Position numbers and translations under genes: made by a program
IMG/VR virus record: IMGVR_UViG_3300032242_003291
Coordinates: 248,001-312,000 of that record
Length of the DNA stretch: 64,000 bases
Direction: 5' to 3' (one strand)
Shown here: one piece after another, positions 45,509 through 64,000 of the stretch
Numbering within the stretch: the stretch's first letter is position 1
Layout: each line of letters begins with the position of its first letter
The notes under the pieces: generated by a model
What the model was told of the DNA's origin: nothing
The model's input: the letters and a program-made list of their open reading frames with translations, nothing else
Database searches by the model: none

Positions 45509-48463
45509 TTACATACAACACTCCAAACTATTTGTTACTGTTGAACCTCCATTTAAGACAATAGCATTATTGTTATAATGTCCATATAAAGTTGGAGTAC
45601 CATACACGTTATTGTTACAAATTGCATGATAATAGTTGTCAGCTTGAGTATAATATATGTCTACAGGGACTTTACTAATACAATCATAGTATCTTAACCA
45701 AACTGTATTATTCCAATTAGGAGTTGAGTTACCATAAGAAGCATCAAAATCCGAGGTGGTTAAAACAAGATTATAATACGTACAATCACATGACGATACA
45801 GGGTCAGCATTTTTCTGATATGATGTCGTAACATCAATTGTATCTACAGTATCTCCTGCAACTGATGTACAACAAATACATCCATTTATTATAGGATTAG
45901 TTATATGTCCACTAATTTTTCCTTCCAAAACAGTAACACAACTATTTGTACTTATTTGTCCGTCAGTTATTACTAAATCTGATGTGCTTGTTACTAATAT
46001 AGTAGAGGTACTTGATAAAGTAATATTATATGATTGGGTGTCCGTTATTGTTGTTTGAGACTCAGGACTACAATTTGGTCTCGTTGTTGTATTGGTAGTT
46101 GTTTTTGGATTTAATGCAACAAGATTATTACCGTCTTGTGATACCACAATTCCATTTGATATTGTACCAGTACCTGGTCCGTTCACAATTTTGAATGAAG
46201 AGAAGTCCAAGGTAGCTTGTATTGTTACTCCCGTTGGTATTGCTGGTGTTGAAATTATATTATATCTACTTACTCCCGAATTTTTATTCGATGAAGGATT
46301 TGTTTGTGAATCGACTAATTTAAATGATAATTGATATGTTGTTGGTGCTTGATTAAATCCAATTGTAATAACATTTGATAAAGTTGTCCCTGAAGAATCT
46401 TTAACCAATGTAGTATATGTGTTCGGACATAAATTGAAGAAGAAGTTACTTGTTTGCCAAGTCAATCCATTATTGATTGAATATACATATGGTGATGTAC
46501 CATAAGATGCAGCAATCGTAATTGAACCATCACAGTTTTGTGTTCCATTACAAGTACTATTTTGATAAGTAACTTGAGCTTGTAAAGGTACTTTGGTAGG
46601 ACAATCACCTTCAGTCATTGTGACTGTATAAGTTATACTTCCTCCAGCCACTTGCCATAAAGCCGTTGGAATATTAGATGTTGTTGTACTTACGAATATT
46701 CCACCTCCATCGGAAATAAATGGTGTCTTCATATCTTGTTCAACAATTTCCCAAACAAGATTATTCCAAATAATATTATAAGTCCCGTTTGTCCAAGTAG
46801 TTTTTCCATTAAACATACCATTACATGTAAATTGTAATGGACCATAGGAAGTTGTACTACTAATTGCAACAAAACATAATTTAGGACATGTACCTGAAGG
46901 AGTAACAGTTGGAGTTGCAGTCACTGTTGGTGTTGGAGTTGATGTAGGTGCAAAAATACTACAAATTGTTGTTGCTGTATAATCACGATAATAATCAATA
47001 ACCGTGCATTGATAAGTTCCTCCTGAAATTCCTGATAATGTTTGATTTCTTTGTCCATTATCCCAATAAAACGAATAAGGGCTTGTTCCACCAGTTACAT
47101 TCAAAGATAAAATTCCATCATTTGAGTTTGCAGAAGATGGATACTTAATAACATTACAAGTTGCACCCATGTCAAACAATGTGAACACCTGACAATCGTT
47201 TTGAGGTTTATATACTGGTAAATTACTTGAGGTTGGAGTAATTGATGGAGTTAATGTAGGAGTTGGTGAAGATGTGATTGAAGGTGTGGGTGTAACTGCT
47301 GGTGTCGATGTTGTTGTTGGCGTAGGTGTTGGTGTTGGTGTTACACAATTTGCGGCATAACTGACGTATAACTTAGTCACACCATTTGTTGCTTTTGAAT
47401 AATCTAATGTGATAGGTAAACCGACTTGTGTTCCTTGAACAAAATTTCCACAGCAATCGGTATAATAATAATTTCCTGTTGTAATACCTTGACCACAATT
47501 AAGTTGTGTAGTTGTAGGTGTTGGGTTGGGCGTTCTTGTCATTGTAGGTGTATTAGTAGGTGTAGAAGTGTTTGTTGGTGTTGGCGTGGGTGTATTTGAA
47601 GGTGCTGGTGTACTGGTTGATGTTGGTGTTGGCGTCGGTGTATTACTAGATGTTGGTGTCGGTGTTGGTGCAACGCAGTATTGATAACTAACACAATTTC
47701 CACTACATGTTGAATAAACGTATCCTGATGGACAAGTATATCCTGAAGATGTGTAGTTTCCATTTATGTCTTGAGCAAGAGTAAATTGTGTAACATTACC
47801 TGTTGTAAAGATAATATTCAAATCATTCATTGTAGTTGCTCCTGTTAATTGAGCCAATGTGTTGTCGTAAATTTCACATCCGAAACCAGCAGGATTTGTA
47901 CTTCCACCTGGGTCGTTCAATCCGTATAATTCCAACGTATGATTTCCAGCCCCAATTTCAACAGGGTATACATGCCAGTAGGTAAATGCACTATATTGAC
48001 CTGAATAAGGTGCTGGTGAAGCCTTTGTGTTCAAGATTTGAACTCCGTCTAATACAAGTCTAAATTCATTATCCGCAGCAATACCAACATAATAGGTTTT
48101 TGTTGCAATAAATCCTGTTAAACATTTTGAAAATCCTAACCAAGTGTTAATCGGAGTCGCATTTAATGCAGTTGTATCCCAAATTGCGGTTCTATTCAAA
48201 GGTCCTTGACTTGAAGATAAACCTGGGTTAGCCCAAATATTGTTTGTTGTAACTATACCATAAGTTGTACCTGTACCACAAACTGAAAATCCTGGTTCAT
48301 AAAATACAGTACCGTATCTTGAATATAAATTGTATGACGTTCTTACAACAGGTAAGATTGTTGTAGGAGGCGTAGCCCCAACCACAACCTCTCTAAAACA
48401 AGAGTTGTCGTCATATGGGTACCAAGTATACGCTGGATTACAATCTGAACAGTTATATGCCAT
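45509..48463 (-). CDS. Cys-rich, Pro/Thr-linker virion/adhesion protein with SprB-like repeats
   Basis: N-domain shared with the collagen fibre; TPTP tracts; DGILSLNVTGGTSPYSFYW and DGSITIAASYGTSPYVYSIN repeats. Confidence 0.7.
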   Translation of the reverse strand: MAYNCSDCNPAYTWYPYDDNSCFREVVVGATPPTTILPVVRTSYNLYSRYGTVFYEPGFSVCGTGTTYGIVTTNNIWANPGLSSSQGPLNRTAIWDTTALNATPINTWLGFSKCLTGFIATKTYYVGIAADNEFRLVLDGVQILNTKASPAPYSGQYSAFTYWHVYPVEIGAGNHTLELYGLNDPGGSTNPAGFGCEIYDNTLAQLTGATTMNDLNIIFTTGNVTQFTLAQDINGNYTSSGYTCPSGYVYSTCSGNCVSYQYCVAPTPTPTSSNTPTPTPTSTSTPAPSNTPTPTPTNTSTPTNTPTMTRTPNPTPTTTQLNCGQGITTGNYYYTDCCGNFVQGTQVGLPITLDYSKATNGVTKLYVSYAANCVTPTPTPTPTTTSTPAVTPTPSITSSPTPTLTPSITPTSSNLPVYKPQNDCQVFTLFDMGATCNVIKYPSSANSNDGILSLNVTGGTSPYSFYWDNGQRNQTLSGISGGTYQCTVIDYYRDYTATTICSIFAPTSTPTPTVTATPTVTPSGTCPKLCFVAISSTTSYGPLQFTCNGMFNGKTTWTNGTYNIIWNNLVWEIVEQDMKTPFISDGGGIFVSTTTSNIPTALWQVAGGSITYTVTMTEGDCPTKVPLQAQVTYQNSTCNGTQNCDGSITIAASYGTSPYVYSINNGLTWQTSNFFFNLCPNTYTTLVKDSSGTTLSNVITIGFNQAPTTYQLSFKLVDSQTNPSSNKNSGVSRYNIISTPAIPTGVTIQATLDFSSFKIVNGPGTGTISNGIVVSQDGNNLVALNPKTTTNTTTRPNCSPESQTTITDTQSYNITLSSTSTILVTSTSDLVITDGQISTNSCVTVLEGKISGHITNPIINGCICCTSVAGDTVDTIDVTTSYQKNADPVSSCDCTYYNLVLTTSDFDASYGNSTPNWNNTVWLRYYDCISKVPVDIYYTQADNYYHAICNNNVYGTPTLYGHYNNNAIVLNGGSTVTNSLECCM

Positions 48464-48530
48464 TTATGATGTTATTATATCCTATAAGTATAGGTTTTAA
48501 TGATATTTTGTATAGGTTTATCATATCTAA

Positions 48531-49175
48531 CTAACACTGTACAAAGTTTACTATCTCACCAACAACGTTAATCTGCACCGCATAATAATTACTTCCCCAC
48601 CCCATTTTAATCCATCTATTTTGACCATTAAATGGATTATATAAAGTAATACCAACTTTAGTTTGATAAACCACAGCACCATTAACAGGGACTGAATTTG
48701 CTTGACTAATGTAAGTGTAATAGTTATTAACCGTAATGGTTTCATTACAAGTATTTGCTGAGGTCACGGAAGTTGTTTGACCGATAGCGTGTGTTGCGAT
48801 TGCTGGCGTTAAGGATGGTGTTGGTGTAAAAGTTGGTGTAACTGTAGGTGTTGCAGATTGTGTTGGAGTTATTGTTGGTGTTACTGATTCAGTTGGTGTT
48901 TGTGTTATAGTTTGACTTGGAGTTATTGTTGGTGTTGGTGTATGACTGGCTGTGGGTGTAGGTGTGATTAATACAACATTACCGTCAATACATCCTTGTG
49001 TATCAACAATCTTTACAACAAAATCTACTGTATCATAAGGGTCTGGTACATCAAATACAAATGGAAATGTTGATACAGTTGCAACATAAACACAACTTGC
49101 ACTATATGAATCACAATAGTATATGTTTACTGGTGTGTTAGCCGTTACTGATGTTATGGTTACTTGTTGACTCAT
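48531..49175 (-). CDS. Pro/Thr-rich virion protein
   Basis: start MSQQV overlaps the upstream TGA; N-domain paralogous to 49172..49390. Confidence 0.7.
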   Translation of the reverse strand: MSQQVTITSVTANTPVNIYYCDSYSASCVYVATVSTFPFVFDVPDPYDTVDFVVKIVDTQGCIDGNVVLITPTPTASHTPTPTITPSQTITQTPTESVTPTITPTQSATPTVTPTFTPTPSLTPAIATHAIGQTTSVTSANTCNETITVNNYYTYISQANSVPVNGAVVYQTKVGITLYNPFNGQNRWIKMGWGSNYYAVQINVVGEIVNFVQC

Positions 49176-49390
49176 TGAACTACTGTTACTCCTGAAATTA
49201 TACAATTATTATTATCAATCACTTTCAACATATAAGATGGTGAAGTGTTGTATGGCGATGGTATGTCAAATATGTATGGAGTTGAACTTATTGTTGTAAT
49301 ATAAAAACAAGCCGAGCCATTGGGTTGACAAACAAACACATCGTATGGTGATTGTCCTGTTATACTATCTATTGTTACTTGAATTGCCAT
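49172..49390 (-). CDS. small beta-rich virion protein
   Basis: 72 aa with three Cys. Confidence 0.7.
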   Translation of the reverse strand: MAIQVTIDSITGQSPYDVFVCQPNGSACFYITTISSTPYIFDIPSPYNTSPSYMLKVIDNNNCIISGVTVVQ

Positions 49391-49403
49391 TATCTTAAAT
49401 ATT

Positions 49404-52400
49404 TTAACAAGCTACCGAACTATATGTTACGTTAGGATTATCGGTACCTGAAACACAACTTCCACAAATACTTGCACCCTGAGGGAAGTATTGTCCTTGT
49501 CCGTTACATACATCAGTTTGTCCACTATTTGTTCCCGCCTGAACAAGGACAAAGAATGATGCCGTACTATTCAAATAAATAGGGTTAAGACATTGTGTAC
49601 CACTATTACCATTTTGATAATAAACAGTAACATTCACTAGTGTATCCACACTAACATTATTATCCAAATAAACTGATGCACCCATAAAGTCATCAATAGT
49701 TCCTCCAACGCAAGGTTGCATAAACCCACCTGCTTGAGTTACTTTTGATGGTGGTTTTGTTTGACAAGTATTACAATCATCATAGGTTATTGTAGGTGCG
49801 GAAGAGAAATAATCTCCTGTAAACGTAATTGGCGTTGTATTTTGCGGTGCAATATAGTTAGAATCATATCTACCTAAATAAATCCAACAATTACCACTAC
49901 CATCTTTGAATGTTTGATTTGCCGATATTGTGAATGATAATGGTAATGTTTGTATTACTGTTATTATGTTTCCTGATATTGTTGAACAACTTTGGGCAAC
50001 ATAGACATATACTGGCGATGGAGTCATAGTCGGAGTTTCAGTTGGCGTTGGTGTGTTGGTCGCGGTTTCTGTAGGTGTTTGTGTCATAGTTGGAGTCGGT
50101 GTAGGTGTATCACTACCTGTTGGAGTTGGAGAACTACCAATAGTTGGAGTAGTCGATGGTGTTGCTGTTTGGCTTGCAGTTTGAGTTGGTGTTACAGGAG
50201 ATGTTGTAACAGGTGTACTTGTTTGAGTTGGTGTAGGTGTAGGGGTGTTTGTTGCTGTAGTTGTAACTGATGGGGTAGGAGTTGGATAGATTGAACAATA
50301 AGCACAAGAACCATATATTTGATATATGAAGTTAACAGTAGAATTAGATGAAATATTACTGTCGTCTCTTGTATACGTAACACACATATTTTCATTGTTG
50401 ATGTTTGCAAAGAATGTTGTTCCTGTAATAATACTTACCCCACTAAACACTAATGAATCTGAAGTATATAATTCTTTACCTGTATCACAATTTGTTAAAA
50501 CTTTTGCAGATACACAACTAAATCTCTCATCTAACATAACAAATGTTGCCTTACCTTGAACATCAACAGTTCTTGTTAACGTCACAGATGGTGTATTTGT
50601 TATTGTTGGAGTAATTGCTGGTGTGTAACCACTCATAGTGAATGAAATTGCTTTGTTATCACAAATCATTCCTGTTGGTGAAGGTGTTGGTGTTAAACCA
50701 AATGAGTTTATATCAAAATTAACATCAGCACAAGCAACACTCGGTGTTGGTGTTGGCAATGGTTCCCAATCACAATCAAAATATGCATTGAAATCAAAAG
50801 TATTACAATTGATTGGCGTTGGTGTTGGTGTAGGACAAACTCCTCCTGTGAATTCATTTGCAGAAATATCAGGACATTGAGAATAACATGGTGTTGCTCC
50901 TTGTAATATACAAGAACCACCAAGACTATTACTTAAACACCATGCACTTCCGTTATAATAAATGTATGCTGTTGTAACACCATCCCCAACATAATACTGT
51001 CTTGTATTATATGTTCCCGCATCCGTGTAATTTCCATTGTAATTCAATAGACTTGATAAAGATGACCTTAAACAAAATGTACTATAAGAACATGGTGCTG
51101 CGGTTGATGAAACCGTTGGTGTCATTGTTGGTGTTGTATATGGTGTTGGTGTTGGACTTGGATTTAATAAACACGATTTACAATCAGAATAACTTGGTGC
51201 ACCTAAATCGGGACCACCAGGACCTGAGAATTCAATCCAAGAATAACATTCTCCACTATAAATGTAAGTCGCACCAACAAATGCAGTGTCTTCTTCAACG
51301 TTTGCATAAAATACCGTTTGGTCTGTACACTTACTAAGTAAAGAGGCTTTATTAGCTGACCTTGGACAAATATTATCACCACATCCTCCATCAGTCATCA
51401 AGAAAGAAACCCCATATCCATTATATTGTGGACCTGTACCATCATTTATCACACTCGTTGCACAACCTGTAAATTGAGTGCTACCTGTAATATAATATGT
51501 GACACCAATTGTGGATGGAATTGCTGGGTCATTAAATCTAAAAATGTTAGTTGCGTTAGAACAATCTACAAATTGAACAGTATAACCTAATGTAGGTGAA
51601 GGTGTTGGAGTCTGTGTTGGCGTCTGTGTTGGCGTTTCAGTATTAGTTGGAGTTGGTGTTGGAGTATCACTACCTGTCGGTGTTGGCGTTTCAGTATTAG
51701 TTGGAGTTGGTGTTGGAGTATCACTACCTGTTGGTGTTGGCGTTTCAGTATTAGTTTGAGTTGGAGTCTGAGTTGGCGTTTCAGTATTAGTTGGAGTTGG
51801 TGTTGGAGTATCACTACCTGTAGGAGTTTGAGTTGGAGTTATTGTTGGGTCAGGTGTTGAAGTTGGTGTCGGGTCTGGTGGAGGTGCAATACATGCCAAA
51901 TCAAAACAATCCGCAGGTGCTGGAAATAATAAAGTATCTAAATCAAAATCAAATGGCTGTGGTGTTTGACTTGGAGCAACGTCAGGTAACAAATAACAAG
52001 TGTATATAGAAGTTTGAACCCAACTACCTTGTAAACCACCATTTGTACTTCTTCCTATTTTTGTACCTACACCAGTACAAGGTGACATACTATAATAGTA
52101 GTAGGACACGGAAGGTGTAGATGCTGGTGTTGAATCAGGTGTAGATGCTGGTGTTGAATCAGGTGTAGATGCTGGTGTTGAATCAGGTGTTGGTGTTGGT
52201 GTAGTAATATCACCTGGACAATATTGACCACAAGAACCCAAGTCGGTTAAAAATCCAACATATGGGCCAGTTATACTAATTGCACATACACTATCACCAT
52301 AATTTATATCTACGTTACTGTAACTTACATTATTACAATCTGTATAATAAAACCCACCGTAATTACCAGAATTATTATAATATGTGGTACATTGAATACA

Positions 52401-52724
52401 TGGGATTGTAGGTGTAACAGTTGGAGTTGGGTCTGGTGTTGGTGGTGGTCCACAAAGGATTCCAGTGTTAATGAATGAACTATTTAATGCATCAATTTGT
52501 GCATCATTCTGATAATAGAAAGCAGTTGTAGTTCCAAATTCATCAAAACAGGTTGAAGCACTATAAGTTCCTGAAGAAGTGTAACTTTCAGTTATTGTGT
52601 TACCTAAACAGTCTTGATACATCATATAAACTGTTCCGTCAACATATGGATAACTTCCGCTGTTGCCGAATGAGTTTGCAATGTCAACACCATCAATATA
52701 AAGCTCTAAATATTTACACGCCAT
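49404..52724 (-). CDS. large Cys-rich, mucin-like Pro/Thr-rich virion protein
   Basis: small Cys-rich domains separated by TPTPT tracts; TATTTAT at 52741-52747. Confidence 0.75.
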   Translation of the reverse strand: MACKYLELYIDGVDIANSFGNSGSYPYVDGTVYMMYQDCLGNTITESYTSSGTYSASTCFDEFGTTTAFYYQNDAQIDALNSSFINTGILCGPPPTPDPTPTVTPTIPCIQCTTYYNNSGNYGGFYYTDCNNVSYSNVDINYGDSVCAISITGPYVGFLTDLGSCGQYCPGDITTPTPTPDSTPASTPDSTPASTPDSTPASTPSVSYYYYSMSPCTGVGTKIGRSTNGGLQGSWVQTSIYTCYLLPDVAPSQTPQPFDFDLDTLLFPAPADCFDLACIAPPPDPTPTSTPDPTITPTQTPTGSDTPTPTPTNTETPTQTPTQTNTETPTPTGSDTPTPTPTNTETPTPTGSDTPTPTPTNTETPTQTPTQTPTPSPTLGYTVQFVDCSNATNIFRFNDPAIPSTIGVTYYITGSTQFTGCATSVINDGTGPQYNGYGVSFLMTDGGCGDNICPRSANKASLLSKCTDQTVFYANVEEDTAFVGATYIYSGECYSWIEFSGPGGPDLGAPSYSDCKSCLLNPSPTPTPYTTPTMTPTVSSTAAPCSYSTFCLRSSLSSLLNYNGNYTDAGTYNTRQYYVGDGVTTAYIYYNGSAWCLSNSLGGSCILQGATPCYSQCPDISANEFTGGVCPTPTPTPINCNTFDFNAYFDCDWEPLPTPTPSVACADVNFDINSFGLTPTPSPTGMICDNKAISFTMSGYTPAITPTITNTPSVTLTRTVDVQGKATFVMLDERFSCVSAKVLTNCDTGKELYTSDSLVFSGVSIITGTTFFANINNENMCVTYTRDDSNISSNSTVNFIYQIYGSCAYCSIYPTPTPSVTTTATNTPTPTPTQTSTPVTTSPVTPTQTASQTATPSTTPTIGSSPTPTGSDTPTPTPTMTQTPTETATNTPTPTETPTMTPSPVYVYVAQSCSTISGNIITVIQTLPLSFTISANQTFKDGSGNCWIYLGRYDSNYIAPQNTTPITFTGDYFSSAPTITYDDCNTCQTKPPSKVTQAGGFMQPCVGGTIDDFMGASVYLDNNVSVDTLVNVTVYYQNGNSGTQCLNPIYLNSTASFFVLVQAGTNSGQTDVCNGQGQYFPQGASICGSCVSGTDNPNVTYSSVAC
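51600..52200. repeat. near-perfect DNA repeats encoding Pro/Thr linkers
   Basis: GTTGGCGTTTCAGTATTAGTTGGAGTTGGTGTTGGAGTATCACTACCTG x3 (about 51628-51820) and a 24-bp GGTGTAGATGCTGGTGTTGAATCA tandem (about 52114-52190). Confidence 0.8.
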
Positions 52725-53005: not shown

Positions 53006-53854
53006 TTATTTTATAGCCATACCAATTCCACCTTTGGAATATATTTTATATCCATTATTCTCAAGATAAGAAACTAAAGTATTTTTTTCATCATTTTCCA
53101 AATTAAAATCTTCGTAGATAATGAAATTAGGTAATTCATCAATTTTAATCGACAATAGTAATTTAGCATCAAGTCCTTCAACGTCTAAATGTATCCAATC
53201 CAATTTTTTATTATACGCTGAAAAATGATTAAATATTAAGTCATTTATTGATATTGAACTTCTTTTTGTAGAGTGTATTTCTTCTTTCTCCCAAAAATCA
53301 ATAACCCTTTTTATCACGCTATTTGTATACCCTTTTCCTCCTTCGTAAAACTCGACATCAGAACCATCGGTTGTAATTAAATTATTTACAAGAGTTACCC
53401 CTTGTTTTCCTTCGTAGTTTTTTTTCAACTCAATGAATTGTTTTTCACTTCCTTCTACAAGAACCATATCTGACATAAAATTTCTAACTAGTGGTACCCA
53501 TTCACCAAATTCACCGTCATGAGTTCCAATAACAAGACCTTTAGGTTTAATTCCTTTATTAATTAGTGATTTACAATAAAGCCATAACGATTTGTAAAAT
53601 ATTGACCCGTGTTGAATTACATCCCACCTGTATTGATAAATAAAATTGCCTTGGGCATCTCTAACTACAACATCATTCATTTCAGTATTTGGAAATTTAG
53701 CCCACATTTCATTAGTTAAATTTGTTTCCCAAACAATTTTTTTTGATAAGGCATTTTTAATTTGAAAATTAATCGGCAATTGTTCGGGTGTAAAAATACC
53801 CGTAAGGTTACCAGTTTCTATTTTAATATCATCGGAATAGATTATGTTAATCAT
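53006..53854 (-). CDS. FkbM-family methyltransferase with extra N-terminal beta domain
   Basis: IGTHDG, VLVEG, IHLDVEGLD, FIIYE. Confidence 0.75.
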   Translation of the reverse strand: MINIIYSDDIKIETGNLTGIFTPEQLPINFQIKNALSKKIVWETNLTNEMWAKFPNTEMNDVVVRDAQGNFIYQYRWDVIQHGSIFYKSLWLYCKSLINKGIKPKGLVIGTHDGEFGEWVPLVRNFMSDMVLVEGSEKQFIELKKNYEGKQGVTLVNNLITTDGSDVEFYEGGKGYTNSVIKRVIDFWEKEEIHSTKRSSISINDLIFNHFSAYNKKLDWIHLDVEGLDAKLLLSIKIDELPNFIIYEDFNLENDEKNTLVSYLENNGYKIYSKGGIGMAIK

Positions 53855-57345: not shown

Positions 57346-57924
57346 TTATTTTTTTTTGAATTTTGCAGGGACTCCAACGTAAACCCCACTTGTTACTATG
57401 TTTTTAACCACAGTCGCATTAGCACCTATTATTACATTTGAACTAACGTGTATTTTTTCTTTAATTGATGAGTTATTACCCATATAAACATTTGAACTAA
57501 TATTAACGTTTCCAGATACAATAGAACCTGGCATCGCACTAAAATAATCTCCAATCTTTGAATCATGACCTATTTGAACTCCTCTATTTAGTATTGCATG
57601 TGAACCTATTTTTATATTTGTTGTCAGTATTGAATAGGCCCCAATAAAACTACCTTCTCCTACTTCAATATAATCCAAAATTAATGCAGTTGGATGAACA
57701 AATGTAAAAAATTGGAGCCCTTTAGGTAATCGTTGAACCATTTCATACCTATCCTTGGAGTTTCCAATTGCAATCATTGCAACATGTTCGTTTGGGTCTA
57801 ACATAGATAATGGTGATGTTTCGCTGTCAACATATTTGTCGTCAACAAATCGTTCTAATTTAACCCCCATTTGTGCCATTACTTCTCTTGCATGACCACC
57901 ATTTCCAATTAATACTTTTTTCAT
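57346..57924 (-). CDS. NeuD/PglD-family sugar acetyltransferase
   Basis: IGNGGHAREV, AIGN, VHPTA, IGHD, YVGVPAK. Confidence 0.88.
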   Translation of the reverse strand: MKKVLIGNGGHAREVMAQMGVKLERFVDDKYVDSETSPLSMLDPNEHVAMIAIGNSKDRYEMVQRLPKGLQFFTFVHPTALILDYIEVGEGSFIGAYSILTTNIKIGSHAILNRGVQIGHDSKIGDYFSAMPGSIVSGNVNISSNVYMGNNSSIKEKIHVSSNVIIGANATVVKNIVTSGVYVGVPAKFKKK

Positions 57925-58565
57925 TGTTTGTAAATTTCGTATTTTGATAAATCTGGATATGGTAATTCCAAATCTAAATTATCTTTTTTACTTCCATCCA
58001 GATTATAAAATTGAGTCATCATCAACAATCCTCTTGCTGCAAGTTCAGGCATCATATAAAAATTCCAACCTAACATATCAAAATTATCGTCATGGTAAGA
58101 ACATTCTCTTCTACCACTAAATCTGGCTCTCTTAAACCATAACATCGCCTGATAGTCATCAGTAATTATTGCGCCTCCTTTACTCAATTTTAATGTCTTA
58201 TAAGGTCCTGTAAATGATAGACACATATGTGTCCCTGAGACGTACATATCCGCAGTAAACCTCAATGCTGAGTCAACAACATTACTTGGAAATAATCTGT
58301 AAGCCCCTTTAATTGTTTTTCCTTCAACAGGTGTGAAATTAACCTTCAATCCTGCATGAATTATCTCACAAGGAACCGAAGGATATGTCTTCGAAGGACA
58401 GTCTACAGTGTCTCCTGTAAATGACTTCTTAACATGTTTTTCATAATATAACGCTAAGAATAATGCGTTACTCATATTATCTAATGCAATAGCATGAGGA
58501 GCACCTGTGTAATCACACAATGTTTTCTCAAAATCTTCAGTAATTTTATGTACACCTTGTGCCAT
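57921..58565 (-). CDS. DegT/DnrJ-family PLP aminotransferase, short form
   Basis: FEKTLCDYTG..HAIA, DSA, LSF..YKTL..KGGAI.TDD, GWNFYM. Confidence 0.8.
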   Translation of the reverse strand: MAQGVHKITEDFEKTLCDYTGAPHAIALDNMSNALFLALYYEKHVKKSFTGDTVDCPSKTYPSVPCEIIHAGLKVNFTPVEGKTIKGAYRLFPSNVVDSALRFTADMYVSGTHMCLSFTGPYKTLKLSKGGAIITDDYQAMLWFKRARFSGRRECSYHDDNFDMLGWNFYMMPELAARGLLMMTQFYNLDGSKKDNLDLELPYPDLSKYEIYKQ

Positions 58566-58614: not shown

Positions 58615-58660
58615 AACTTTATATTTTGTGAAACAAATCACCTTTTTTATGACCGATACA
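58615..58660 (+). pseudogene. remnant of the GT4 glycosyltransferase gene
   Basis: ATATTTTGTGAAACAAATCACCTTTTTTATGACCGATAC matches 62321-62363 (ILCETNHHLFYDQY). Confidence 0.75.
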
Positions 58661-59612
58661 TAATCTCGACGTCATTTATCAAAGTTAAATTTTCCTCAAT
58701 AGTGAAATCAATGTTAAAATATTTTATATCATTAATGAATGCCTTTGCGTTTTTTATATCTGTAATTTCAACTTTTTTTGTATTCCAAGTTTTTGGTTGA
58801 ATTTTTAAATTTGTAAAAAAATTGTCATTGATTATTAAATCAAGAGAAACTTCAATACTTGTTCCGTTATGAATAAAATAATTTAAATCATCACCACTTC
58901 TAAAAAAAGTAAAAGCAATTTTACTTAAAATATTTTCTGACATAATTTCACATTTTCCAAAATCTAAGAATTTCTCTAACTCTTGGTGATTCAATTTTAA
59001 TACTTTTTGATTTTCAAATAACAACTCATAAACAGTTCTTTCACTTGAAAATAAATCACTATCTAAATGAACTTTTTTATACAAGTCAAAGATTTTTTTA
59101 TAGTTGTATTCAAATGTTTCAAAGTGAAATTTTTCCAAATTTATTGAAATTAAATTTCCAATAATATTACCTCTGTCGCTCTCATAGATAACAACATCGT
59201 TGTTTTCAAGTTTACTTTTGTTTATTTCAAGAATACTCAAATCTTTGATTAGTGCGTCATATTCAAGAACATGAACTATTTTATATTCGGCATTTTTTAA
59301 AAAGGACAAAGGAAGTTGCCACAATCTAAGTATCGCAGGTACATGACTTGAAGGAAAGAAATAAGATTTATGCATAATATAAAAATCATCGTTGGCAAAG
59401 AATCTTTTTCCTTTCAATGAGTTGTCAGTAATAAATGGATTATTTTTATCATAAAAATAAAAATCAACATCTTCTACAATATCAAAAGGTAACACACAAT
59501 GACTGGCAATACAAATTTTATACTTTGAATTAATTTGACGAATTAATTTTTTTAAAATAAGTTTTTTTTCGCTTGTGTTTGAAAAATCCGTTATAAGTAC
59601 TATCTCACTCAT
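58647..59612 (-). CDS. putative glycosyltransferase-like protein
   Basis: ICIASHC, YFYDKNN, HVLEYDA; glycan-island context. Confidence 0.5.
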   Translation of the reverse strand: MSEIVLITDFSNTSEKKLILKKLIRQINSKYKICIASHCVLPFDIVEDVDFYFYDKNNPFITDNSLKGKRFFANDDFYIMHKSYFFPSSHVPAILRLWQLPLSFLKNAEYKIVHVLEYDALIKDLSILEINKSKLENNDVVIYESDRGNIIGNLISINLEKFHFETFEYNYKKIFDLYKKVHLDSDLFSSERTVYELLFENQKVLKLNHQELEKFLDFGKCEIMSENILSKIAFTFFRSGDDLNYFIHNGTSIEVSLDLIINDNFFTNLKIQPKTWNTKKVEITDIKNAKAFINDIKYFNIDFTIEENLTLINDVEIMYRS

Positions 59613-59663: not shown

Positions 59664-60428
59664 TTAAACCCAAAAATCGATATTTAGCCATTCGTCATTT
59701 ACTGTATGACAATTTATTGATGGTTGTACTGTCCCTATTTTACAACTCTCACTATTAATTAAATTAATTAAATCTTCGTCATTTTTATAGTTTAAAATAC
59801 ACGGATATTTATAAAAATTTTCATTTAGTATTGTTTTTCTACCCATTAATGCCATTTCTATTGCTGTTGCCATTCCATTACCGTCAGACAAATTTAAGTT
59901 AAGAAAAGATTTATCGTAATAATTATTTTTCAAATAATTTATATCATAGTAATCATTAATATTAAAATGATTCGTAGTTATTATTTCATAATTAATTTGT
60001 TTTTGTATTTGTTTTAATTTTTCAACGTTAAATTGATTACTCCATCCATTTTTAAAACCAGTATATGCATATATTTTATCCCCCAAAACATTAGGTTCAA
60101 ACAATGAGTAATCTTTAACTTCTATCGTTACGTTTCTACAATTAACATTATCAGGTATTTTTGAAATTAATCTAACTTCTTCTAATATATTAATAATGAA
60201 CAAATCATCTGTATTTGTGACTATATCAAAATTTGGTAGGTCATATGGGTTTGTAAGAAATATAAATTTGTATGATTTATGATTTTGTATTTGATGAGAT
60301 AATTCGTTTCCGCCAAAAAATATACATGGTTTGTTCACATCATAATATTCATCAAAATTATATCTTTCAATAAAACCTTTTTTAAAAAAATTAACAGAAG
60401 GGGCAACAAGTGTTTGAGATATTCTCAT
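59664..60428 (-). CDS. putative GT-B-like glycosyltransferase
   Basis: DGNGMATAIEMALMGRK resembles the GT-B E-x7-E region. Confidence 0.45.
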   Translation of the reverse strand: MRISQTLVAPSVNFFKKGFIERYNFDEYYDVNKPCIFFGGNELSHQIQNHKSYKFIFLTNPYDLPNFDIVTNTDDLFIINILEEVRLISKIPDNVNCRNVTIEVKDYSLFEPNVLGDKIYAYTGFKNGWSNQFNVEKLKQIQKQINYEIITTNHFNINDYYDINYLKNNYYDKSFLNLNLSDGNGMATAIEMALMGRKTILNENFYKYPCILNYKNDEDLINLINSESCKIGTVQPSINCHTVNDEWLNIDFWV

Positions 60429-60502: not shown

Positions 60503-61129
60503 TCATTTTTTCTTATAATAAGAATATTCACCAAAATCGCCAACCAACTCACAATGTGGTGTTAAAAATTTATTAATAGAATTACGAACACTATCCCAAC
60601 TGGAATCGTCCATAATAATATATCCTCCCTTCTTAACTAAAGGTAAATAAAGTAAAATGTCTCTTGATACATTCATCTCATTGTGATTTCCGTCAATATG
60701 TAATACATCTATCGATTCTTTTTCAAAATGAATGAATGAGTCCTCTGATGGTTCTCTAATTATTGTAATTGTTTTCGATAAATCATTATTTTCAATAATT
60801 TCACAAACATTTTTGTAAATTGAATCAAAGGTTTCTTGTCCTTTTAATAATTCGTTATAAAAAAATTCTTCTTGATTTTTATCCCAAAAAGGGATTTCAT
60901 TTTTTGACATTTCAAAAGACCATGGGTCAATACCAATAATTTTTCCTTCAATTTTTTCTAAAACCTCTGCAAAAGAAAATAAAGAACTACCTTTATACAC
61001 TCCAATTTCAACACAAACTTTACTGTGAGTTGTTTTAATTAAATTATGTATAAGATTTCTTTTCTCATCAATACACCAACCTCCTTGGTCATAAACATCA
61101 TTTTTAATTAATCCTCTTAAATTTCTCAT
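60503..61129 (-). CDS. class I SAM-dependent methyltransferase (Methyltransf_24-like)
   Basis: VEIGVYKGSS, IGIDPW, IDVLHIDGNH, GGYIIMDD. Confidence 0.85.
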   Translation of the reverse strand: MRNLRGLIKNDVYDQGGWCIDEKRNLIHNLIKTTHSKVCVEIGVYKGSSLFSFAEVLEKIEGKIIGIDPWSFEMSKNEIPFWDKNQEEFFYNELLKGQETFDSIYKNVCEIIENNDLSKTITIIREPSEDSFIHFEKESIDVLHIDGNHNEMNVSRDILLYLPLVKKGGYIIMDDSSWDSVRNSINKFLTPHCELVGDFGEYSYYKKK

Positions 61130-61130
61130 G

Positions 61131-61835
61131 TTATTTTTTTTGTATTATAATTTTTATATTATCGTAACTATCGTAGTGTGTCCCAATTAGTTTCCAATCG
61201 GTGTTACCTTTCAAAACGTGTTGGTAAATATGAACCCCTTTACCGACCATTGGATAAGGAATAACCATATTATCTTCTTGACCATTAGCATGAAACCACT
61301 GAACATATGTACCTTGTTTATAATTGTCATCGATTACAATAATACTACCTTTTAACATTTTTGATTCGATTGCTTTAAACTCTTCCCAACCATGTAATGC
61401 ACTTGGAAATGCATCAAATAAATTAAAATCCCAACTGTCTAAATGGACAAAATTAGGTATTTCTTCAATATTTTTTAAAAACGAAACAGAATCACTTACG
61501 TGTATTGAATAATCCAAATTAGGAATAGCATCTTCAAATATTTTTACACTTTTTTCAACAATGTTAGATGAGATGTCAACTGACGTCATTTTACCATTTG
61601 TGTTTTTTGCAACATACCCTAAAAAAAGACCAAATAACCCATCGTTATAGTTTGATGATGCTCCAGTTTCTAAAACAATCAATTTATCAAAATTGAATTC
61701 ATCATTAATTGAGTCAATAACTGTTTCACATTGTTGTCTCCTAATTCTGTGTGCATTTGAATTTTCATAATCAAAAATGACTGTCTTCATATGACTTAAG
61801 TATTCCTCATATCCCTCTAAAAAATTTTGTTTCAT
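61131..61835 (-). CDS. class I SAM-dependent methyltransferase-like protein
   Basis: VLETG, SVDI, DSVSFL, HLDSWD, IVIDDN...GKG. Confidence 0.75.
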   Translation of the reverse strand: MKQNFLEGYEEYLSHMKTVIFDYENSNAHRIRRQQCETVIDSINDEFNFDKLIVLETGASSNYNDGLFGLFLGYVAKNTNGKMTSVDISSNIVEKSVKIFEDAIPNLDYSIHVSDSVSFLKNIEEIPNFVHLDSWDFNLFDAFPSALHGWEEFKAIESKMLKGSIIVIDDNYKQGTYVQWFHANGQEDNMVIPYPMVGKGVHIYQHVLKGNTDWKLIGTHYDSYDNIKIIIQKK

Positions 61836-61952: not shown

Positions 61953-62008
61953 TTAATTTAAGTTTTGGATTGAAAATATAATTGATATGCATTATATTTT
62001 CAACATTA
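61953..62008. repeat. second copy of the degT/GT4 intergenic region
   Basis: TTAATTTAAGTTTT.GATT.AAAATATAATTGA.ATG..TTATATTTTCAAC also at 58566-58617. Confidence 0.8.
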
Positions 62009-62024
62009 AAAAGACATAATTGAA

Positions 62025-64000
62025 ATGAGTAAATCAAAAATTTTTGCACATGGTTCCTATGTTGGTAACACAGGATATAATCAACACACAAGAGATTTTT
62101 TCAGACATCTTAGTAAACACGCAGATATAAAAGTTAGAAACTTTACGATAGGTAATTCTTGGAAGGGTTATTCCGAAAGACCACATGATAACGAAACTTA
62201 CTTTAATGCAACCGATGAAAAACTATTATATCAACAAGTTCTTTGGAATGGTGACAACACAAGAAGTAATTTTCCAATTTATTCAGATAAATCAAAAAAT
62301 TTCACACCTGATGTTAACATTATATTATGTGAAACAAATCACCACCTTTTTTATGACCAATACAATGGTCCGAAAATTGCATATAACGTATGGGAGTCTA
62401 CATTGCAACCTAAAGAATACTTCAACAAATTAAAAGAATTTGATGAAATGTGGGTACCATCAAAATGGCAAAGAGACTGTACCATAGCTCAAGGTTATGA
62501 CCCAAACAAAATTAAAGTCGTTCCTGAAGGTGTTGATGTTAATACATTTTACCCCGATAACTCAGTAAATCATCCATTAACAAAAGACAAGTTTACATTC
62601 TTTTTAGCGGGAAGATGGGATTATAGAAAATCTATCAAGGAAATTATTGAAACATTTATAAAGACTTTTAATAACAACGAACCTGTTGAGTTAATTGTTT
62701 CTGTTGATAATCCATTTTCGAATGATGGATTAAACTCAACTGAAGAAAGATTGAAACATTATGGGTTAGAAGATGATAGAATTAAAATTCTCCATTTCCC
62801 ACCAAGAGAGGAATACATTAGATTGTTAAAATCTTGTAATGTATTTGTATCATGCGCAAGAGCAGAAGGTTGGAACTTACCACTTATTGAGGCTATGGCT
62901 TGTGGTACTCCGTCAATTTATTCAGATTGTTCAGGTCAGTTGGAATTTGCAGAGGGTAGAGGTATACCTGTTAAAATATCGCATGAATTACCTGTAAGTG
63001 CTAGTACATATAATCACTTCAACGATAATGTTGGAAACTATTATGAACCTGATTTTTATGATTTGGGTATCAAAATAAAAAATGTGTTTGAGGATTATAA
63101 AAAGTATAAAATTTTTGCATTAGTAGAATCAGAACAAATTAGAGAAGAGTTTAGTTGGGAAAATGTTGCTAAAATAGGTATTGATACTATTAATGATTTT
63201 TTAGACAGAAAACCTTGGTTAAATAAACCAATCAAAACTAATGAAATTAAAATTAGTTATTTAGATGGTCCAAGAGTTGAAGTATCAGGTGACGAAAAGA
63301 AAGATTATTTTGTTGAATTTATTGATAGTACCGATGGAAAGGTAATACATTCTCAAACTATTAGTAATAACATGTGGGTTTCTTGTAGTAAAAAATACTA
63401 TATTCCTTGGATAATTAAAATTAATGGTGAAGTTTACGATGAACTGAATTTAGAAGGAAAAACGGTAATGATTTCACTTGAATCAAAAGCTTTAGGTGAT
63501 ACTATATCTTGGGCACCATATGCTGTTGAATTTCAAAAGAAACATAATTGTAAGGTGTTATTGTCCACTTTCAAAAATAACTTCTTTGAAGGTTTAGAAT
63601 CATATAAAAATATAACCTTTATCAAACCAGGTGAATCTCATGGTTGTGATGTAATATACAGAATCGGTTGGTTTAAAAAAGATAAGAAATGGGAAGATAG
63701 AGACAAAAATCCAAATCAACCAAACTTGATTCCACTTCAACAAGCAGCAACCGACATTTTAGGTTTAGAATATAAAGAACTTAACTTTGGTTTAAATTTT
63801 GAAAAAAAGGAAAAACCTATGGAAAAAGATTATGTAGTGTTCGCACCAAATGCAACTTCAGGTTGTAAAGAGTGGGATTATAATCATTGGGTGACATTAT
63901 CTAAACTCATTAAAGAATTAGGATATGATGTTTTAACATTAACACAAAAACCATTTCACATAGATGGTGTATTAAATATTTGGGATGAACCTTTGGACGT
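62025..64000 (+). CDS. GT4 glycosyltransferase fused to a TibC/Aah-like (autotransporter heptosyltransferase-like) domain; 3' end outside window, not in ORF track
   Basis: MSKSKIFAHGSYVGNTGY..WES..WVPSKW..GRWDYRK..AEGWNLPLIEAMACGTP, then DGPRVE..SKKYY..ALGDTISWAPYAVEFQKKHNCKV..KEW. Confidence 0.85.
   Translation, partial: MSKSKIFAHGSYVGNTGYNQHTRDFFRHLSKHADIKVRNFTIGNSWKGYSERPHDNETYFNATDEKLLYQQVLWNGDNTRSNFPIYSDKSKNFTPDVNIILCETNHHLFYDQYNGPKIAYNVWESTLQPKEYFNKLKEFDEMWVPSKWQRDCTIAQGYDPNKIKVVPEGVDVNTFYPDNSVNHPLTKDKFTFFLAGRWDYRKSIKEIIETFIKTFNNNEPVELIVSVDNPFSNDGLNSTEERLKHYGLEDDRIKILHFPPREEYIRLLKSCNVFVSCARAEGWNLPLIEAMACGTPSIYSDCSGQLEFAEGRGIPVKISHELPVSASTYNHFNDNVGNYYEPDFYDLGIKIKNVFEDYKKYKIFALVESEQIREEFSWENVAKIGIDTINDFLDRKPWLNKPIKTNEIKISYLDGPRVEVSGDEKKDYFVEFIDSTDGKVIHSQTISNNMWVSCSKKYYIPWIIKINGEVYDELNLEGKTVMISLESKALGDTISWAPYAVEFQKKHNCKVLLSTFKNNFFEGLESYKNITFIKPGESHGCDVIYRIGWFKKDKKWEDRDKNPNQPNLIPLQQAATDILGLEYKELNFGLNFEKKEKPMEKDYVVFAPNATSGCKEWDYNHWVTLSKLIKELGYDVLTLTQKPFHIDGVLNIWDEPLD

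What the first reader, a model, noticed from the sequence alone, without database searches (positions are those of the whole stretch)
45509..64000. Candidate phage-encoded virion glycosylation system: mucin-like structural proteins beside a glycan island with a TibC/Aah-like protein glycosyltransferase
Seen: four adjacent late genes (45509-52724), three of them encoding Cys-rich domains joined by long Thr/Pro/Ser tracts. They are followed by ten consecutive glycan-type genes: FkbM MTase, two acetyltransferases, a DegT aminotransferase, two more MTases, several GT-like proteins, and an unlisted ORF from 62025. That ORF is a GT4 fused to a domain carrying TibC/Aah-like motifs (DGPRVE..SKKY..LGD..W.PY..FQ.KH.C). 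Established: TibC/Aah glycosylate Ser residues of bacterial adhesins, and DegT plus PglD/NeuD-type enzymes make N-acetylated amino sugars. Inference: the phage builds an unusual methylated/acetylated glycan and attaches it to its own Thr/Ser-rich fibres, giving a glycocalyx for receptor binding, protease resistance or camouflage. The alternative is remodelling of host surface glycans for superinfection exclusion.
Basis: partly seen in the sequence, partly recalled or inferred. Interest (0 to 1): 0.8.

Follow-up and report, generated by a model that had tools for sequence, protein, structure and literature searches.

The report
Phage TibC-type fibre glycosylation locus
A 317-kb uncultured phage carries a large sugar-handling gene cluster built around an enzyme of the TibC/Aah family, which puts sugars on serines of proteins.

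Summary
Positions 45509-52724 hold three (not four) Cys-rich ORFs with long Thr/Pro/Ser tracts. Positions 53006-61835 plus the ORF from 62025 hold ten genes, seven with tool support for a sugar-related function.

The ORF from 62025 is a 762-aa GT4 fused to a true TibC/Aah-family domain. It scores 218 bits against NCBIfam TIGR04414 (cut-off 200) and E 1.8e-34 against the TibC structure. It keeps the catalytic Asp and all four iron-finger Cys. LPS heptosyltransferases do not match.

The proposed target is not supported. The PT-rich genes are a conserved module tied to a 732-aa gene in one jumbo-phage family, and glycan-island genes lie beside that module in about one locus in ten.

The TibC-like gene instead pairs with collagen-like genes whose X/Y positions are 80-97% Ser/Thr and have no Pro:
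- 64 of 144 viral loci have one nearby, against 4 of 139 control loci.
- 21 of 39 cellular loci have one nearby.
- The median gap is under 800 bp.

In this phage that fibre gene lies about 3 kb beyond the window end.

Best reading: the phage glycosylates its Ser/Thr-rich collagen-like fibres in the cytoplasm. This is a new variant of a known kind, and no biochemistry has been done.

The parts
62025..64000 (+). First 658 codons of a 762-aa GT4 + TibC/Aah-type (BAHT) glycosyltransferase fusion. The gene ends 313 nt beyond the window (L002:10001-12289).
   Evidence: Pfam finds GT4 families plus TibC_1st and GT9. Against the TibC structure 4RAP it gives E 1.8e-34 over residues 412-754. NCBIfam TIGR04414 scores 218 bits, cut-off 200.
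61131..61835 (-). 234-aa protein of unknown function, first gene of the minus-strand island.
   Evidence: No Pfam or NCBIfam match reaches significance. It matches phrog_24975 (unknown function) and only chance-level PDB hits.
60503..61129 (-). SAM-dependent methyltransferase of the Methyltransf_24 / CmcI / TylF type, typical of sugar O-methyltransferases.
   Evidence: Pfam PF13578, E 5e-21; PF04989, E 8e-8.
59664..60428 (-). 254-aa protein of unknown function.
   Evidence: No match in Pfam, PHROGs, NCBIfam or PDB.
58647..59612 (-). 321-aa protein, possibly a GT-A-like glycosyltransferase domain (lead only).
   Evidence: Atlas structure search: its fold recurs as a domain inside viral 'Aah/TibC family' multidomain proteins and in GT2/GT25-bearing clusters, TM 0.57-0.69. 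Homologues occur in 6 TibC loci.
57921..58565 (-). Short (214 aa) DegT/PseC-like aminotransferase homologue. It lacks the C-terminal domain and part of the large domain.
   Evidence: Pfam PF01041, E 7e-14, covers only profile positions 26-98. The PDB alignment to perosamine synthetase covers 37-99 and 182-246, which includes the Lys region. It is 73-92% identical in relatives.
57346..57924 (-). NeuD/PglD/VioB-type sugar N-acetyltransferase.
   Evidence: TIGR03570 scores 160.6 bits (cut-off 160.8); PglD_N and hexapeptide repeats are present.
54393..57305 (-). 970-aa multidomain glycosyltransferase with two GT-A-fold domains: DUF6625 at 359-535 and a DxD domain at about 585-870. The N-terminal 350 aa are unresolved.
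   Evidence: Pfam DUF6625, E 2e-27. D696 and D698 are invariant in alignment A3. The AF2 model matches heparosan synthase 2, chondroitin polymerase K4CP, LH3 and GT6/GT8 enzymes at E 3e-9 to 1e-6. The DxD domain is fused or adjacent to TibC proteins in other clades.
53851..54396 (-). Hexapeptide-repeat O-acetyltransferase (CatB/Vat-like).
   Evidence: Pfam Hexapep, E 1e-10. NCBIfam CatB and Vat models score 100-130 bits, below their equivalog cut-offs.
53006..53854 (-). FkbM-family methyltransferase.
   Evidence: Pfam PF05050 scores 27 bits, cut-off 22.7.
49404..52724 (-). 1106-aa protein with 48 Cys and five PT(S) tracts of up to 100 aa. It belongs to the conserved PT module, and nothing shows it to be an acceptor.
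   Evidence: Homologues lie upstream of the 732-aa gene in 69 of 80 related loci.
48531..49205 (-). 224-aa protein with one 37-aa PT tract.
   Evidence: It matches phrog_15511 and phrog_21885, both of unknown function. Homologues are present in 60 of 80 related loci.
45509..48463 (-). 984-aa protein with 36 Cys and three PT tracts. The N-terminal 265 aa may be a PA14/CBM-like beta-sandwich (lead only).
   Evidence: Atlas feature hits score 0.90-0.92 to PA14-containing clusters. Homologues are present in 74 of 80 related loci.
43276..45474 (-). 732-aa conserved protein of unknown function, the anchor of the PT-rich module in this jumbo-phage family.
   Evidence: It has at least 302 relatives in viral contigs. 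No family match was found. The AF2 model has pLDDT 70.5 and no informative fold match.

Best explanation
This is a phage-encoded, cytoplasmic protein O-glycosylation system.

Core enzyme. The core is a GT4 domain fused to a TibC/Aah-family (BAHT) glycosyltransferase (window 62025 onward, 762 aa). A second, barrel-less TibC-like enzyme follows it with a 1-nt overlap.

Most likely acceptor. The acceptor is probably the collagen-like fibre protein encoded convergently about 3 kb beyond the window end (L002:14931-16946, minus strand, cut by the contig end). Its Gly-X-Y repeats are 96% Ser/Thr at X and Y (GSS/GTS) and contain no proline.

Inferred mechanism. The TibC-like domain transfers a first sugar onto the repeat serines before virion assembly. 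By homology that sugar is a heptose from ADP-heptose. The fused GT4, the tandem GT-A protein and the other candidate transferases extend it. The FkbM and CmcI-type methyltransferases, the two acetyltransferases and the DegT-like/PglD pair supply or decorate methylated and N-/O-acetylated sugars. The result would be a densely glycosylated fibre. Glycans may take over the role that proline or hydroxyproline has in keeping such repeats extended or triple-helical, and they may shape adsorption or protection.

Shown: family membership of the enzyme, the gene content, and the genomic pairing. Inferred: the acceptor, the donor sugar, the order of steps and the physical effect.
For: Enzyme:
- TIGR04414 (Aah/TibC equivalog) scores 218 bits against a cut-off of 200, while LPS heptosyltransferase I scores 19.9 bits.
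- TibC is the only GT9-type PDB hit, E 1.8e-34. The downstream 293-aa paralogue gives E 7e-32.
- The equivalents of TibC Asp110, Thr226, Lys230, Trp305 and Cys339/342/358/370 are kept.

Pairing with Ser/Thr collagen-like genes:
- First viral set: 48 of 67 TibC loci have a Ser/Thr-type collagen-like ORF within 10 kb (counts; X/Y composition 80-97% Ser+Thr with Pro about 0). Around terminase the count is 3 of 59 and around primase 1 of 80.
- Replication set: 13 of 73.
- Combined: 64 of 144 loci, and 25 of 44 clusters at 70% identity, against 4 of 139 controls. Fisher p = 3e-18 and 5e-15.
- The median gap between the two genes is 792 bp.
- In 39 cellular or MAG loci, 21 have such an ORF (median gap 742 bp). 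These are often small signal-peptide or lipobox proteins directly flanking a stand-alone TibC-like gene.
- The only cultured phage with the fusion, Microcystis phage Mel-JY01, has the same pair next to its structural module.
- The 735-kb phage LR756501 also has the pair.

Specificity within this phage: the window's three other collagen-like fibre genes (7377-14150) are Q/A/P/T-type with only 16-24% Ser+Thr.

Fibre nature: the Ser/Thr collagen-like proteins have fibre architecture. Pfam finds no Peptidase_S74 domain in this phage's fibre. Some relatives end in sequences that look like that chaperone domain by eye only.

Conserved machinery: the GT4+TibC fusion, with added methyltransferase, PIG-L or SDR domains, is conserved across clades. 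GT-A domains of the island are fused to TibC proteins elsewhere.
Against: - There are no biochemical or proteomic data.
- The pairing depends on clade. In the replication set only 18% of loci (27% of those of at least 12 kb) have a Ser/Thr collagen-like gene nearby, and LR756504 has none. Adjacency could partly reflect shared residence in fibre modules.
- TibC Arg286, a sugar-binding residue, is not conserved (Val here). The stereoselectivity position (Pro300 in TibC) is Gly here and Ser in the family consensus. The beta-hairpin thumb is shorter. The donor sugar and the dodecameric state are therefore uncertain.
- I did not look for heptose-pathway genes, and the host is unknown.
- Within this phage family the TibC operon also lies next to the PT-rich module, so the PT proteins cannot be excluded as acceptors.
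- The function of the minus-strand island is inferred from family names only. Its DegT homologue is truncated, and no sugar dehydratase was found in the island.
Confidence: 0.52

Rival explanations
1. One reading: the glycan is attached to the Thr/Pro/Ser linkers of the three Cys-rich proteins (45509-52724), giving mucin-like virion fibres. This could be instead of, or in addition to, the collagen-like fibre.
For: - The minus-strand island lies directly upstream of the PT genes on the same strand, here and in the closest relatives.
- In the L034-type and L298-type relatives the TibC gene abuts the PT module.
- PT linkers are classic O-glycosylation sites in secreted proteins (general knowledge).
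- The N-terminal domain of the 984-aa protein may be lectin/PA14-like.
Against: - The PT module is present in 74 of 80 relatives of the 732-aa gene, but island genes are beside it in only about 5-9 of 80 and a TibC-like gene in 14 of 80.
- PT-rich ORFs are near TibC genes in 14 of 67 loci of the first set (all from this phage family) and 3 of 73 of the second.
- No cellular TibC locus was seen to have a PT-type partner, although the PT-tract detector was not run on the cellular loci.
- No evidence was found that the PT proteins are virion components.
Confidence: 0.22
2. The TibC-like enzyme modifies some other phage protein (capsid, tail tube, or another fibre domain). Its frequent adjacency to Ser/Thr collagen-like genes would then only reflect common placement in fibre or accessory modules.
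For: - About 40-55% of TibC loci have no Ser/Thr collagen-like gene within 10 kb.
- In mycobacteriophages the glycosylated proteins are the capsid and tail-tube subunits (as cited in PMC12619734).
Against: - The cellular loci repeat the pairing with small non-fibre Ser/Thr-repeat lipoproteins, which are not phage modules.
- Q/A/P/T-type collagen-like fibres are not enriched next to TibC genes.
Confidence: 0.15
3. The cluster remodels host surface glycans (LPS, capsule or host glycoproteins) during infection, for example for superinfection exclusion.
For: - DegT, PglD, FkbM, GT4 and GT-A families are typical of O-antigen and capsule loci.
- No structural role has been proven for any gene of the region.
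Against: - The defining enzyme belongs to a family that glycosylates proteins in the cytoplasm (PMC4358343) and falls far below the LPS heptosyltransferase threshold.
- No flippase, polymerase, ligase or undecaprenyl-phosphate transferase family was found in the ten genes.
- The pairing with a repeat-protein gene is conserved.
Confidence: 0.08
4. The glycosyltransferases hypermodify phage DNA bases.
For: - Phage glycosyltransferases often act on DNA (discussed in PMC12619734).
- The Pfam GT4-conflict model matches the GT4 domain.
- A DNA methyltransferase is encoded in the window.
Against: - No base-hypermodification genes were found in the region.
- The TibC family is a protein-specific enzyme family, and the conserved partner is a protein-coding repeat gene.
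Confidence: 0.03

Closest known systems
TibC / Aah bacterial autotransporter heptosyltransferases (BAHT family; TibC structures 4RAP/4RB4, PMC4358343)
   Same: - Same family by curated threshold (TIGR04414, 218 bits against 200).
- N-terminal beta-barrel region, catalytic Asp, Thr226/Lys230/Trp305 equivalents and the four-Cys iron finger are all present.
- Predicted to act in the cytoplasm on Ser of a highly repetitive substrate encoded next to the enzyme.
   Different: - Encoded by phages (at least 554 stretches in IMG/VR) and by diverse non-enteric bacteria.
- Fused to a GT4 domain, and often to methyltransferase or other domains.
- The neighbouring candidate substrate is a Gly-Ser/Thr-Ser/Thr collagen-like repeat, not an AIDA-I/TibA beta-helix autotransporter.
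- Arg286 is not kept, the thumb is shorter, and the donor sugar has not been tested.
Mycobacteriophage virion glycosylation (Freeman et al. 2023, PMC10527164, as cited in PMC12619734)
   Same: Phage-encoded glycosyltransferases modify the phage's own structural proteins inside the host cell.
   Different: There the acceptors are the C-termini of capsid and tail-tube subunits, and the enzymes are not BAHT-type (from the citing paper and my own knowledge; I did not read the primary paper). Here the candidate acceptor is a repeat fibre, and the enzyme set is much larger.
BclA-type glycosylated collagen-like exosporium fibres of Bacillus, and glycosylated collagen-like fibrils of giant viruses (own knowledge, not checked here)
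   Same: Collagen-like Gly-X-Y repeats with Thr or Ser carrying O-glycans form a surface nap.
   Different: BclA repeats are GPT (proline-rich) and are glycosylated by unrelated enzymes. The repeats here have no Pro at all, and the partner enzyme is TibC-like.
Thr-O-galactosylated cuticle collagen of Riftia (own knowledge, not checked here)
   Same: Glycosylated Thr in Gly-X-Y repeats stabilises a triple helix without hydroxyproline. This is a precedent for the proposed physical role.
   Different: It is an animal extracellular collagen that still contains Pro in the X position, and the enzymes are unrelated.

Membership tests
BAHT (TibC/Aah) protein O-heptosyltransferases | Scores above the curated family threshold | tested here: met
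   NCBIfam TIGR04414 equivalog: 218 bits, cut-off 200, E 1.8e-64, residues 406-759. LPS heptosyltransferase I TIGR02193 scores only 19.9 bits against a cut-off of 185.
BAHT (TibC/Aah) protein O-heptosyltransferases | N-terminal flattened beta-barrel domain (TibC residues 1-97) before the catalytic domain | tested here: inconclusive
   Pfam TibC_1st matches residues 408-466 at 24.6 bits, just under the gathering score of 27. The phmmer alignment starts at TibC residue 28. No structure model of this domain was made. The downstream 293-aa paralogue lacks this domain.
BAHT (TibC/Aah) protein O-heptosyltransferases | Catalytic base Asp110 | tested here: met
   Aligned Asp in the 'LGD' motif. G87-D88 is invariant in 25 phage sequences. 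The residue's role is taken from PMC4358343.
BAHT (TibC/Aah) protein O-heptosyltransferases | Iron-finger cysteines Cys339, Cys342, Cys358, Cys370 | tested here: met
   All four align to Cys in both phage proteins and are invariant in alignment A1. Metal binding itself was not tested.
BAHT (TibC/Aah) protein O-heptosyltransferases | Sugar-binding residues Thr226, Lys230, Arg286, Trp305 | tested here: inconclusive
   Thr226, Lys230 and Trp305 are kept. Arg286 aligns to Val, and that column is variable in the phage family.
BAHT (TibC/Aah) protein O-heptosyltransferases | Beta-hairpin thumb and dodecameric ring | not testable with these tools
   The thumb region is about 10 residues shorter in the alignment. 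The oligomeric state needs experiment.
BAHT (TibC/Aah) protein O-heptosyltransferases | Uses ADP-heptose as donor | not tested
   I did not search for heptose-pathway genes. The stereoselectivity position (Pro300 in TibC, Ser294 in AAH) is Gly here and Ser in the family consensus.
BAHT (TibC/Aah) protein O-heptosyltransferases | Acceptor is an adjacent self-associating autotransporter (AIDA-I/TibA/Ag43 type) | tested here: not met
   No autotransporter gene lies in the window or in L002. The recurrent neighbour is a Ser/Thr collagen-like repeat protein.
Collagen-like (Gly-X-Y) fibre proteins | Long uninterrupted Gly-X-Y repeats | tested here: met
   L002:14931-16946 matches Pfam Collagen at E 3e-56 and has 456 residues in GXY runs.
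Collagen-like (Gly-X-Y) fibre proteins | Proline-rich or charged X/Y positions that stabilise the triple helix | tested here: not met
   X/Y composition is 79% Ser, 17% Thr and 0% Pro. Whether a triple helix forms cannot be told from sequence.
Phage virion glycosylation systems | The glycosylated protein is a virion component | not testable with these tools
   Fibre-like architecture of the Ser/Thr collagen-like proteins and, in Mel-JY01, placement beside the structural module are indirect evidence only.

The most novel reading that the evidence does not exclude
BAHT-type O-glycosyltransferases and proline-free (Gly-Ser/Thr-Ser/Thr)n repeats form a widespread, so far undescribed enzyme-substrate pair. 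Phages would use it for their fibres and diverse bacteria for small exported lipoproteins. Dense Ser/Thr O-glycosylation would replace proline or hydroxyproline in giving the repeat a stiff, possibly triple-helical, form. That would be a second kind of 'collagen' whose stability is written by a glycosyltransferase.
Probability: 0.35. Interest if true: 0.8.

Novelty: new variant of a known kind. Interest (0 to 1): 0.66.

Why it matters
- TibC/Aah enzymes are known only as modifiers of enterobacterial adhesins. Here the family turns out to be common in phages (hundreds of IMG/VR contigs) and in environmental bacteria, with a different and very simple candidate substrate.
- If confirmed, this would give a second, mechanistically distinct example of virion glycosylation in phages.
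- It would explain how proline-free Gly-Ser-Ser repeats can serve as fibres.
- It would offer a compact two-gene system (enzyme plus repeat) for making densely glycosylated rods.
- It makes a concrete prediction for a cultured system, Microcystis phage Mel-JY01.

Tried and rejected
- Nucleotide search of 45000-64000 against GenBank phages found no match. tblastn of the 984-aa and 732-aa proteins also found nothing.
- The 732-aa protein: Pfam, PHROGs and Atlas gave only uncharacterised viral relatives. An AF2 model from 36 homologues (pLDDT 70.5) had no significant PDB fold match, and its only BFVD match was an uncharacterised homologue. So the 'late/structural' label of the PT module stays unverified.
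- The promoter and terminator scan of 44500-64000 found no more sites than in shuffled sequence.
- PDB sequence searches for 58647-59612, 59664-60428, 61131-61835 and the 970-aa protein gave nothing useful.
- Literature searches found no paper linking TibC/BAHT with phages or collagen-like proteins. Mel-JY01 has no paper in the library. One search was wasted on the currency 'baht'.
- My first estimate of the TibC-collagen pairing (about 75%) was too high. A second, independently drawn set gave 18%, so I report the combined and dereplicated figures.
- Some Ser/Thr collagen-like genes in the control and 732-aa-gene sets have no TibC gene in the fetched stretch. Most lie at the locus edge, so the reverse association could not be settled.
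- I did not use read mapping, the metagenome scan or the large protein-database searches. They would not have decided between the models.


Full report
WHERE THE WINDOW COMES FROM. The window is positions 248001-312000 of IMG/VR contig UViG_3300032242_003291 (317,259 bp), identified through locus L002. Window position = L002 position + 52024. GC content is about 30%, except for a collagen-gene island at 8-14 kb. The surrounding genes are phage-like: primase 41186-42100, RuvC-like resolvase 42671-43273, SbcC-like 33835-36213 and a DNA N6-methyltransferase 30843-33188. No cultured phage is close at the DNA level, and the best primase matches are about 30% identical. The host is unknown.

THE OBSERVATION: PT-RICH GENES. 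All genes from 43276 to 61835 are on the minus strand, and the ORF from 62025 diverges on the plus strand. The range 45509-52724 holds three ORFs, not four: 984 aa with 36 Cys, 224 aa with 5 Cys, and 1106 aa with 48 Cys. Their Thr/Pro/Ser tracts run from 15 to 100 residues.

THE OBSERVATION: GLYCAN-TYPE GENES. Ten genes follow.
- Supported by family searches: an FkbM methyltransferase, a CatB/Vat-like hexapeptide O-acetyltransferase, a NeuD/PglD-type N-acetyltransferase (160.6 bits, cut-off 160.8), and a CmcI/TylF-type methyltransferase.
- The DegT homologue is only 214 aa. It aligns to perosamine synthetase residues 37-99 and 182-246 and lacks the C-terminal domain. It is nevertheless 73-92% identical among relatives, so it is under selection.
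- The 970-aa protein carries DUF6625 and a second domain with an invariant DxD motif. Its AF2 model is confident only for residues about 353-540 and 600-820. That model matches tandem GT-A enzymes: heparosan synthase 2, chondroitin polymerase K4CP, LH3, and GT6/GT8 transferases.
- The 321-aa protein is a GT-A-like lead from the Atlas.
- The 254-aa and 234-aa proteins remain unexplained.

THE KEY ENZYME. On the contig the ORF from 62025 is 762 aa long.
- Residues 103-383 are a GT4 domain.
- Residues 406-759 score 218 bits on NCBIfam TIGR04414, 'autotransporter strand-loop-strand O-heptosyltransferase' (cut-off 200). LPS heptosyltransferase I scores 19.9 bits.
- Among solved structures the only GT9-type hit is TibC, at E 1.8e-34 with residues 412-754 aligned to TibC 28-379.
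- Measured against the features defined in the TibC paper (PMC4358343), the protein keeps the catalytic Asp110, Thr226, Lys230, Trp305 and the four iron-finger cysteines. These are invariant or nearly so in 25 phage homologues. Arg286 is not kept, the position of Pro300 is Gly (Ser in the family consensus, as in AAH), and the beta-hairpin thumb is shorter.

THE REST OF THE OPERON, BEYOND THE WINDOW END.
- A second TibC-like gene of 293 aa without the beta-barrel overlaps the stop codon by one base (TibC E 7e-32).
- Next come a 332-aa ORF with no family match and another FkbM methyltransferase.
- Convergent with these, 37 bp further on, lies a collagen-like gene (L002:14931-16946). Pfam Collagen gives E 3e-56, and the gene is cut by the contig end.

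WHAT TRAVELS WITH WHAT. I fetched 67 viral loci with relatives of the fusion. As controls I fetched 59 loci around a terminase and 80 around the primase.
- A collagen-like ORF (at least 8 consecutive Gly-X-Y triplets, at least 30 residues in all) lies within 10 kb in 51 of 67 TibC loci. The control figures are 3 of 59 and 5 of 80.
- PT-rich ORFs show the opposite pattern: 14 of 67 near TibC but 72 of 80 near primase.
- The TibC-linked collagen-like ORFs are of a special kind. X and Y positions are 80-97% Ser+Thr (GSS/GTS) with essentially no Pro. The window's own three other collagen-like fibre genes (7377-14150) are Gln/Ala/Pro/Thr-type with 16-24% Ser+Thr. Pfam finds a Peptidase_S74 chaperone domain in the two of them that were scanned.
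- A second, independent draw of 73 TibC loci, found with the domain alignment, gave a much weaker figure of 13 of 73. I therefore report the combined result. Of 144 loci, 64 are positive. Of 62 loci with at least 5 kb on both sides, 36 are positive. Of 44 clusters at 70% identity, 25 are positive. Of 139 control loci, 4 are positive. Fisher p = 3e-18 by loci and 5e-15 by clusters.
- Relatedness among loci means these p-values overstate independence. The pairing does recur in 6 of 9 clusters at 50% identity.
- The median distance between the two genes is 792 bp.

THE SAME PAIR IN CELLULAR GENOMES. A scan of one genome per species found 39 loci with TibC-like genes. They include Methylobacter, other Methylococcales, Arenicellales, Acidiferrobacterales and Bacteroidota MAGs. 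Of these, 21 have a Ser/Thr-type Gly-X-Y ORF nearby, with a median gap of 742 bp. In chromosomes of Methylobacter luteus and an Arenicellales bacterium, the partners are small proteins with a signal peptide or lipobox, (GTS/GSS/GTA)n repeats and often a poly-Asp tail. They directly flank a stand-alone TibC-like gene. These are not phage fibre modules. This argues that the link is functional (enzyme and substrate) rather than an accident of phage genome layout.

OTHER PHAGES. The only cultured phage with the fusion, Microcystis phage Mel-JY01 (46% identity, a 1226-aa version), has a Ser/Thr collagen-like ORF 1.7 kb upstream and the terminase-portal-capsid module downstream. One of two huge phages with a TibC-like gene also has the pair.

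THE PT-RICH GENES. They form a conserved module with the 732-aa gene 43276-45474.
- That gene has at least 302 relatives in viral contigs.
- Homologues of the 984-aa, 224-aa and 1106-aa proteins lie just upstream of it in 74, 60 and 69 of 80 loci.
- Island genes are next to the module in only about 5-9 of 80 loci, and a TibC-like gene lies within reach in 14 of 80.
- In several sub-lineages the order is: 732-aa gene, PT genes, variable glycan genes, GT4-TibC, FkbM, Ser/Thr collagen-like gene.
- Outside the family the link disappears (3 of 73).
- I could not establish what the PT proteins or the 732-aa protein do. A PA14/CBM-like N-terminal domain in the 984-aa protein is only a lead.

MECHANISM.
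- Shown: a BAHT-family enzyme fused to a GT4; a second BAHT paralogue; at least two GT-A domains; three FkbM or class-I methyltransferases; two acetyltransferases; a DegT-like protein; and a Ser/Thr-rich collagen-like fibre gene, all within 16 kb. The statistical pairing of the enzyme with that kind of repeat is also shown.
- Inferred: as TibC does for TibA in the cytoplasm (PMC4358343), the enzyme glycosylates the repeat serines before assembly. The fused GT4 and the GT-A enzymes extend the glycan, and the methyl- and acetyltransferases decorate it. The GT4+TibC fusion, often with methyltransferase, PIG-L or SDR domains, is conserved across clades. Domains of the 970-aa and 321-aa proteins occur fused to TibC proteins elsewhere. 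This supports one pathway rather than unrelated genes.
- Speculative: glycans may stiffen a proline-free Gly-Ser-Ser repeat. Precedents from my own knowledge are glycosylated Thr in Riftia cuticle collagen and the BclA exosporium fibres.

WHAT IS KNOWN. BAHT enzymes are described for enterobacterial and Burkholderia autotransporters. Phage virion glycosylation is described for mycobacteriophage capsid and tail-tube proteins (cited in PMC12619734). Automatic annotation already labels viral protein clusters as 'Aah/TibC family'. I found no paper that discusses them or their link to collagen-like repeats. I file the enzyme as a BAHT-family member by sequence, with a different candidate acceptor class. 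The system is a new variant of a known kind.

VERDICT. The enzyme call is right and is now firm. The proposed acceptor is probably wrong or at best secondary. The better candidate lies just outside the window. Everything beyond gene content and genomic association remains to be tested.

Noticed in passing
window 7377-14150 (minus strand): Three consecutive collagen-like fibre genes (607, 628 and 1023 aa) of Gln/Ala/Pro/Thr type. The two that were scanned carry a Peptidase_S74 chaperone domain. They account for the GC-rich (0.44-0.51) island in an otherwise 30% GC window. They differ in kind from the Ser/Thr-type collagen-like gene next to the TibC operon.
   Followed up: partly
L001 (Microcystis phage Mel-JY01, PP395634) 2-3049: The plus strand holds a Ser/Thr collagen-like ORF with 606 residues of Gly-X-Y, running from the record start. 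The GenBank record instead annotates a minus-strand 'hypothetical protein' (739-2298) over it. This is probably a strand mis-call in repeat DNA, and the gene is probably split by the record's start point.
   Followed up: partly
L210 8938-11140; L230 8516-12586; also L215, L224, L226, L232, L236: Bacterial chromosomes (Methylobacter, Methylococcales, Arenicellales, Acidiferrobacterales) carry stand-alone TibC-like genes. These are flanked by one to three small exported or lipobox proteins with (GTS/GSS/GTA)n repeats and poly-Asp tails. This looks like an undescribed cellular glycoprotein system.
   Followed up: partly
window 57921-58565: The DegT-like protein has only 214 aa, lacking the C-terminal domain and part of the large domain, yet it is 73-92% identical across phages whose other island proteins are 50-75% identical. 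It may be a minimal aminotransferase or may have taken on another role.
   Followed up: partly
window 43276-45474 and relatives L247-L326: The 732-aa protein is a highly conserved core gene of a large family of freshwater-type jumbo phages. It has at least 302 contigs, 49-80% identity and about 115 invariant positions. It has no recognisable family or fold.
   Followed up: yes
window 2642-4402 and 39429-40316: Two proteins share matches to the same PHROGs of unknown function (phrog_17056 and phrog_28193), so they are probably paralogues. The larger one also has a weak integrase-PHROG match.
   Followed up: no
window 17927-19240: A 437-aa protein with weak leucine-rich-repeat matches at its C-terminus.
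   Followed up: no
L002 13175-14173 (window-equivalent 65199-66197): A 332-aa ORF with no family match lies between the second TibC-like gene and the FkbM gene. It contains a 'GDSH' motif reminiscent of SGNH/GDSL esterases or acyltransferases. I judged this by eye only.
   Followed up: no
L356, L358, L360, L335, L361: In some TibC loci the nearby collagen-like gene is the proline-rich type (Pro 29-39% and Ser+Thr 3-5% of X/Y positions). The pairing with the Ser/Thr type is therefore not exclusive.
   Followed up: no
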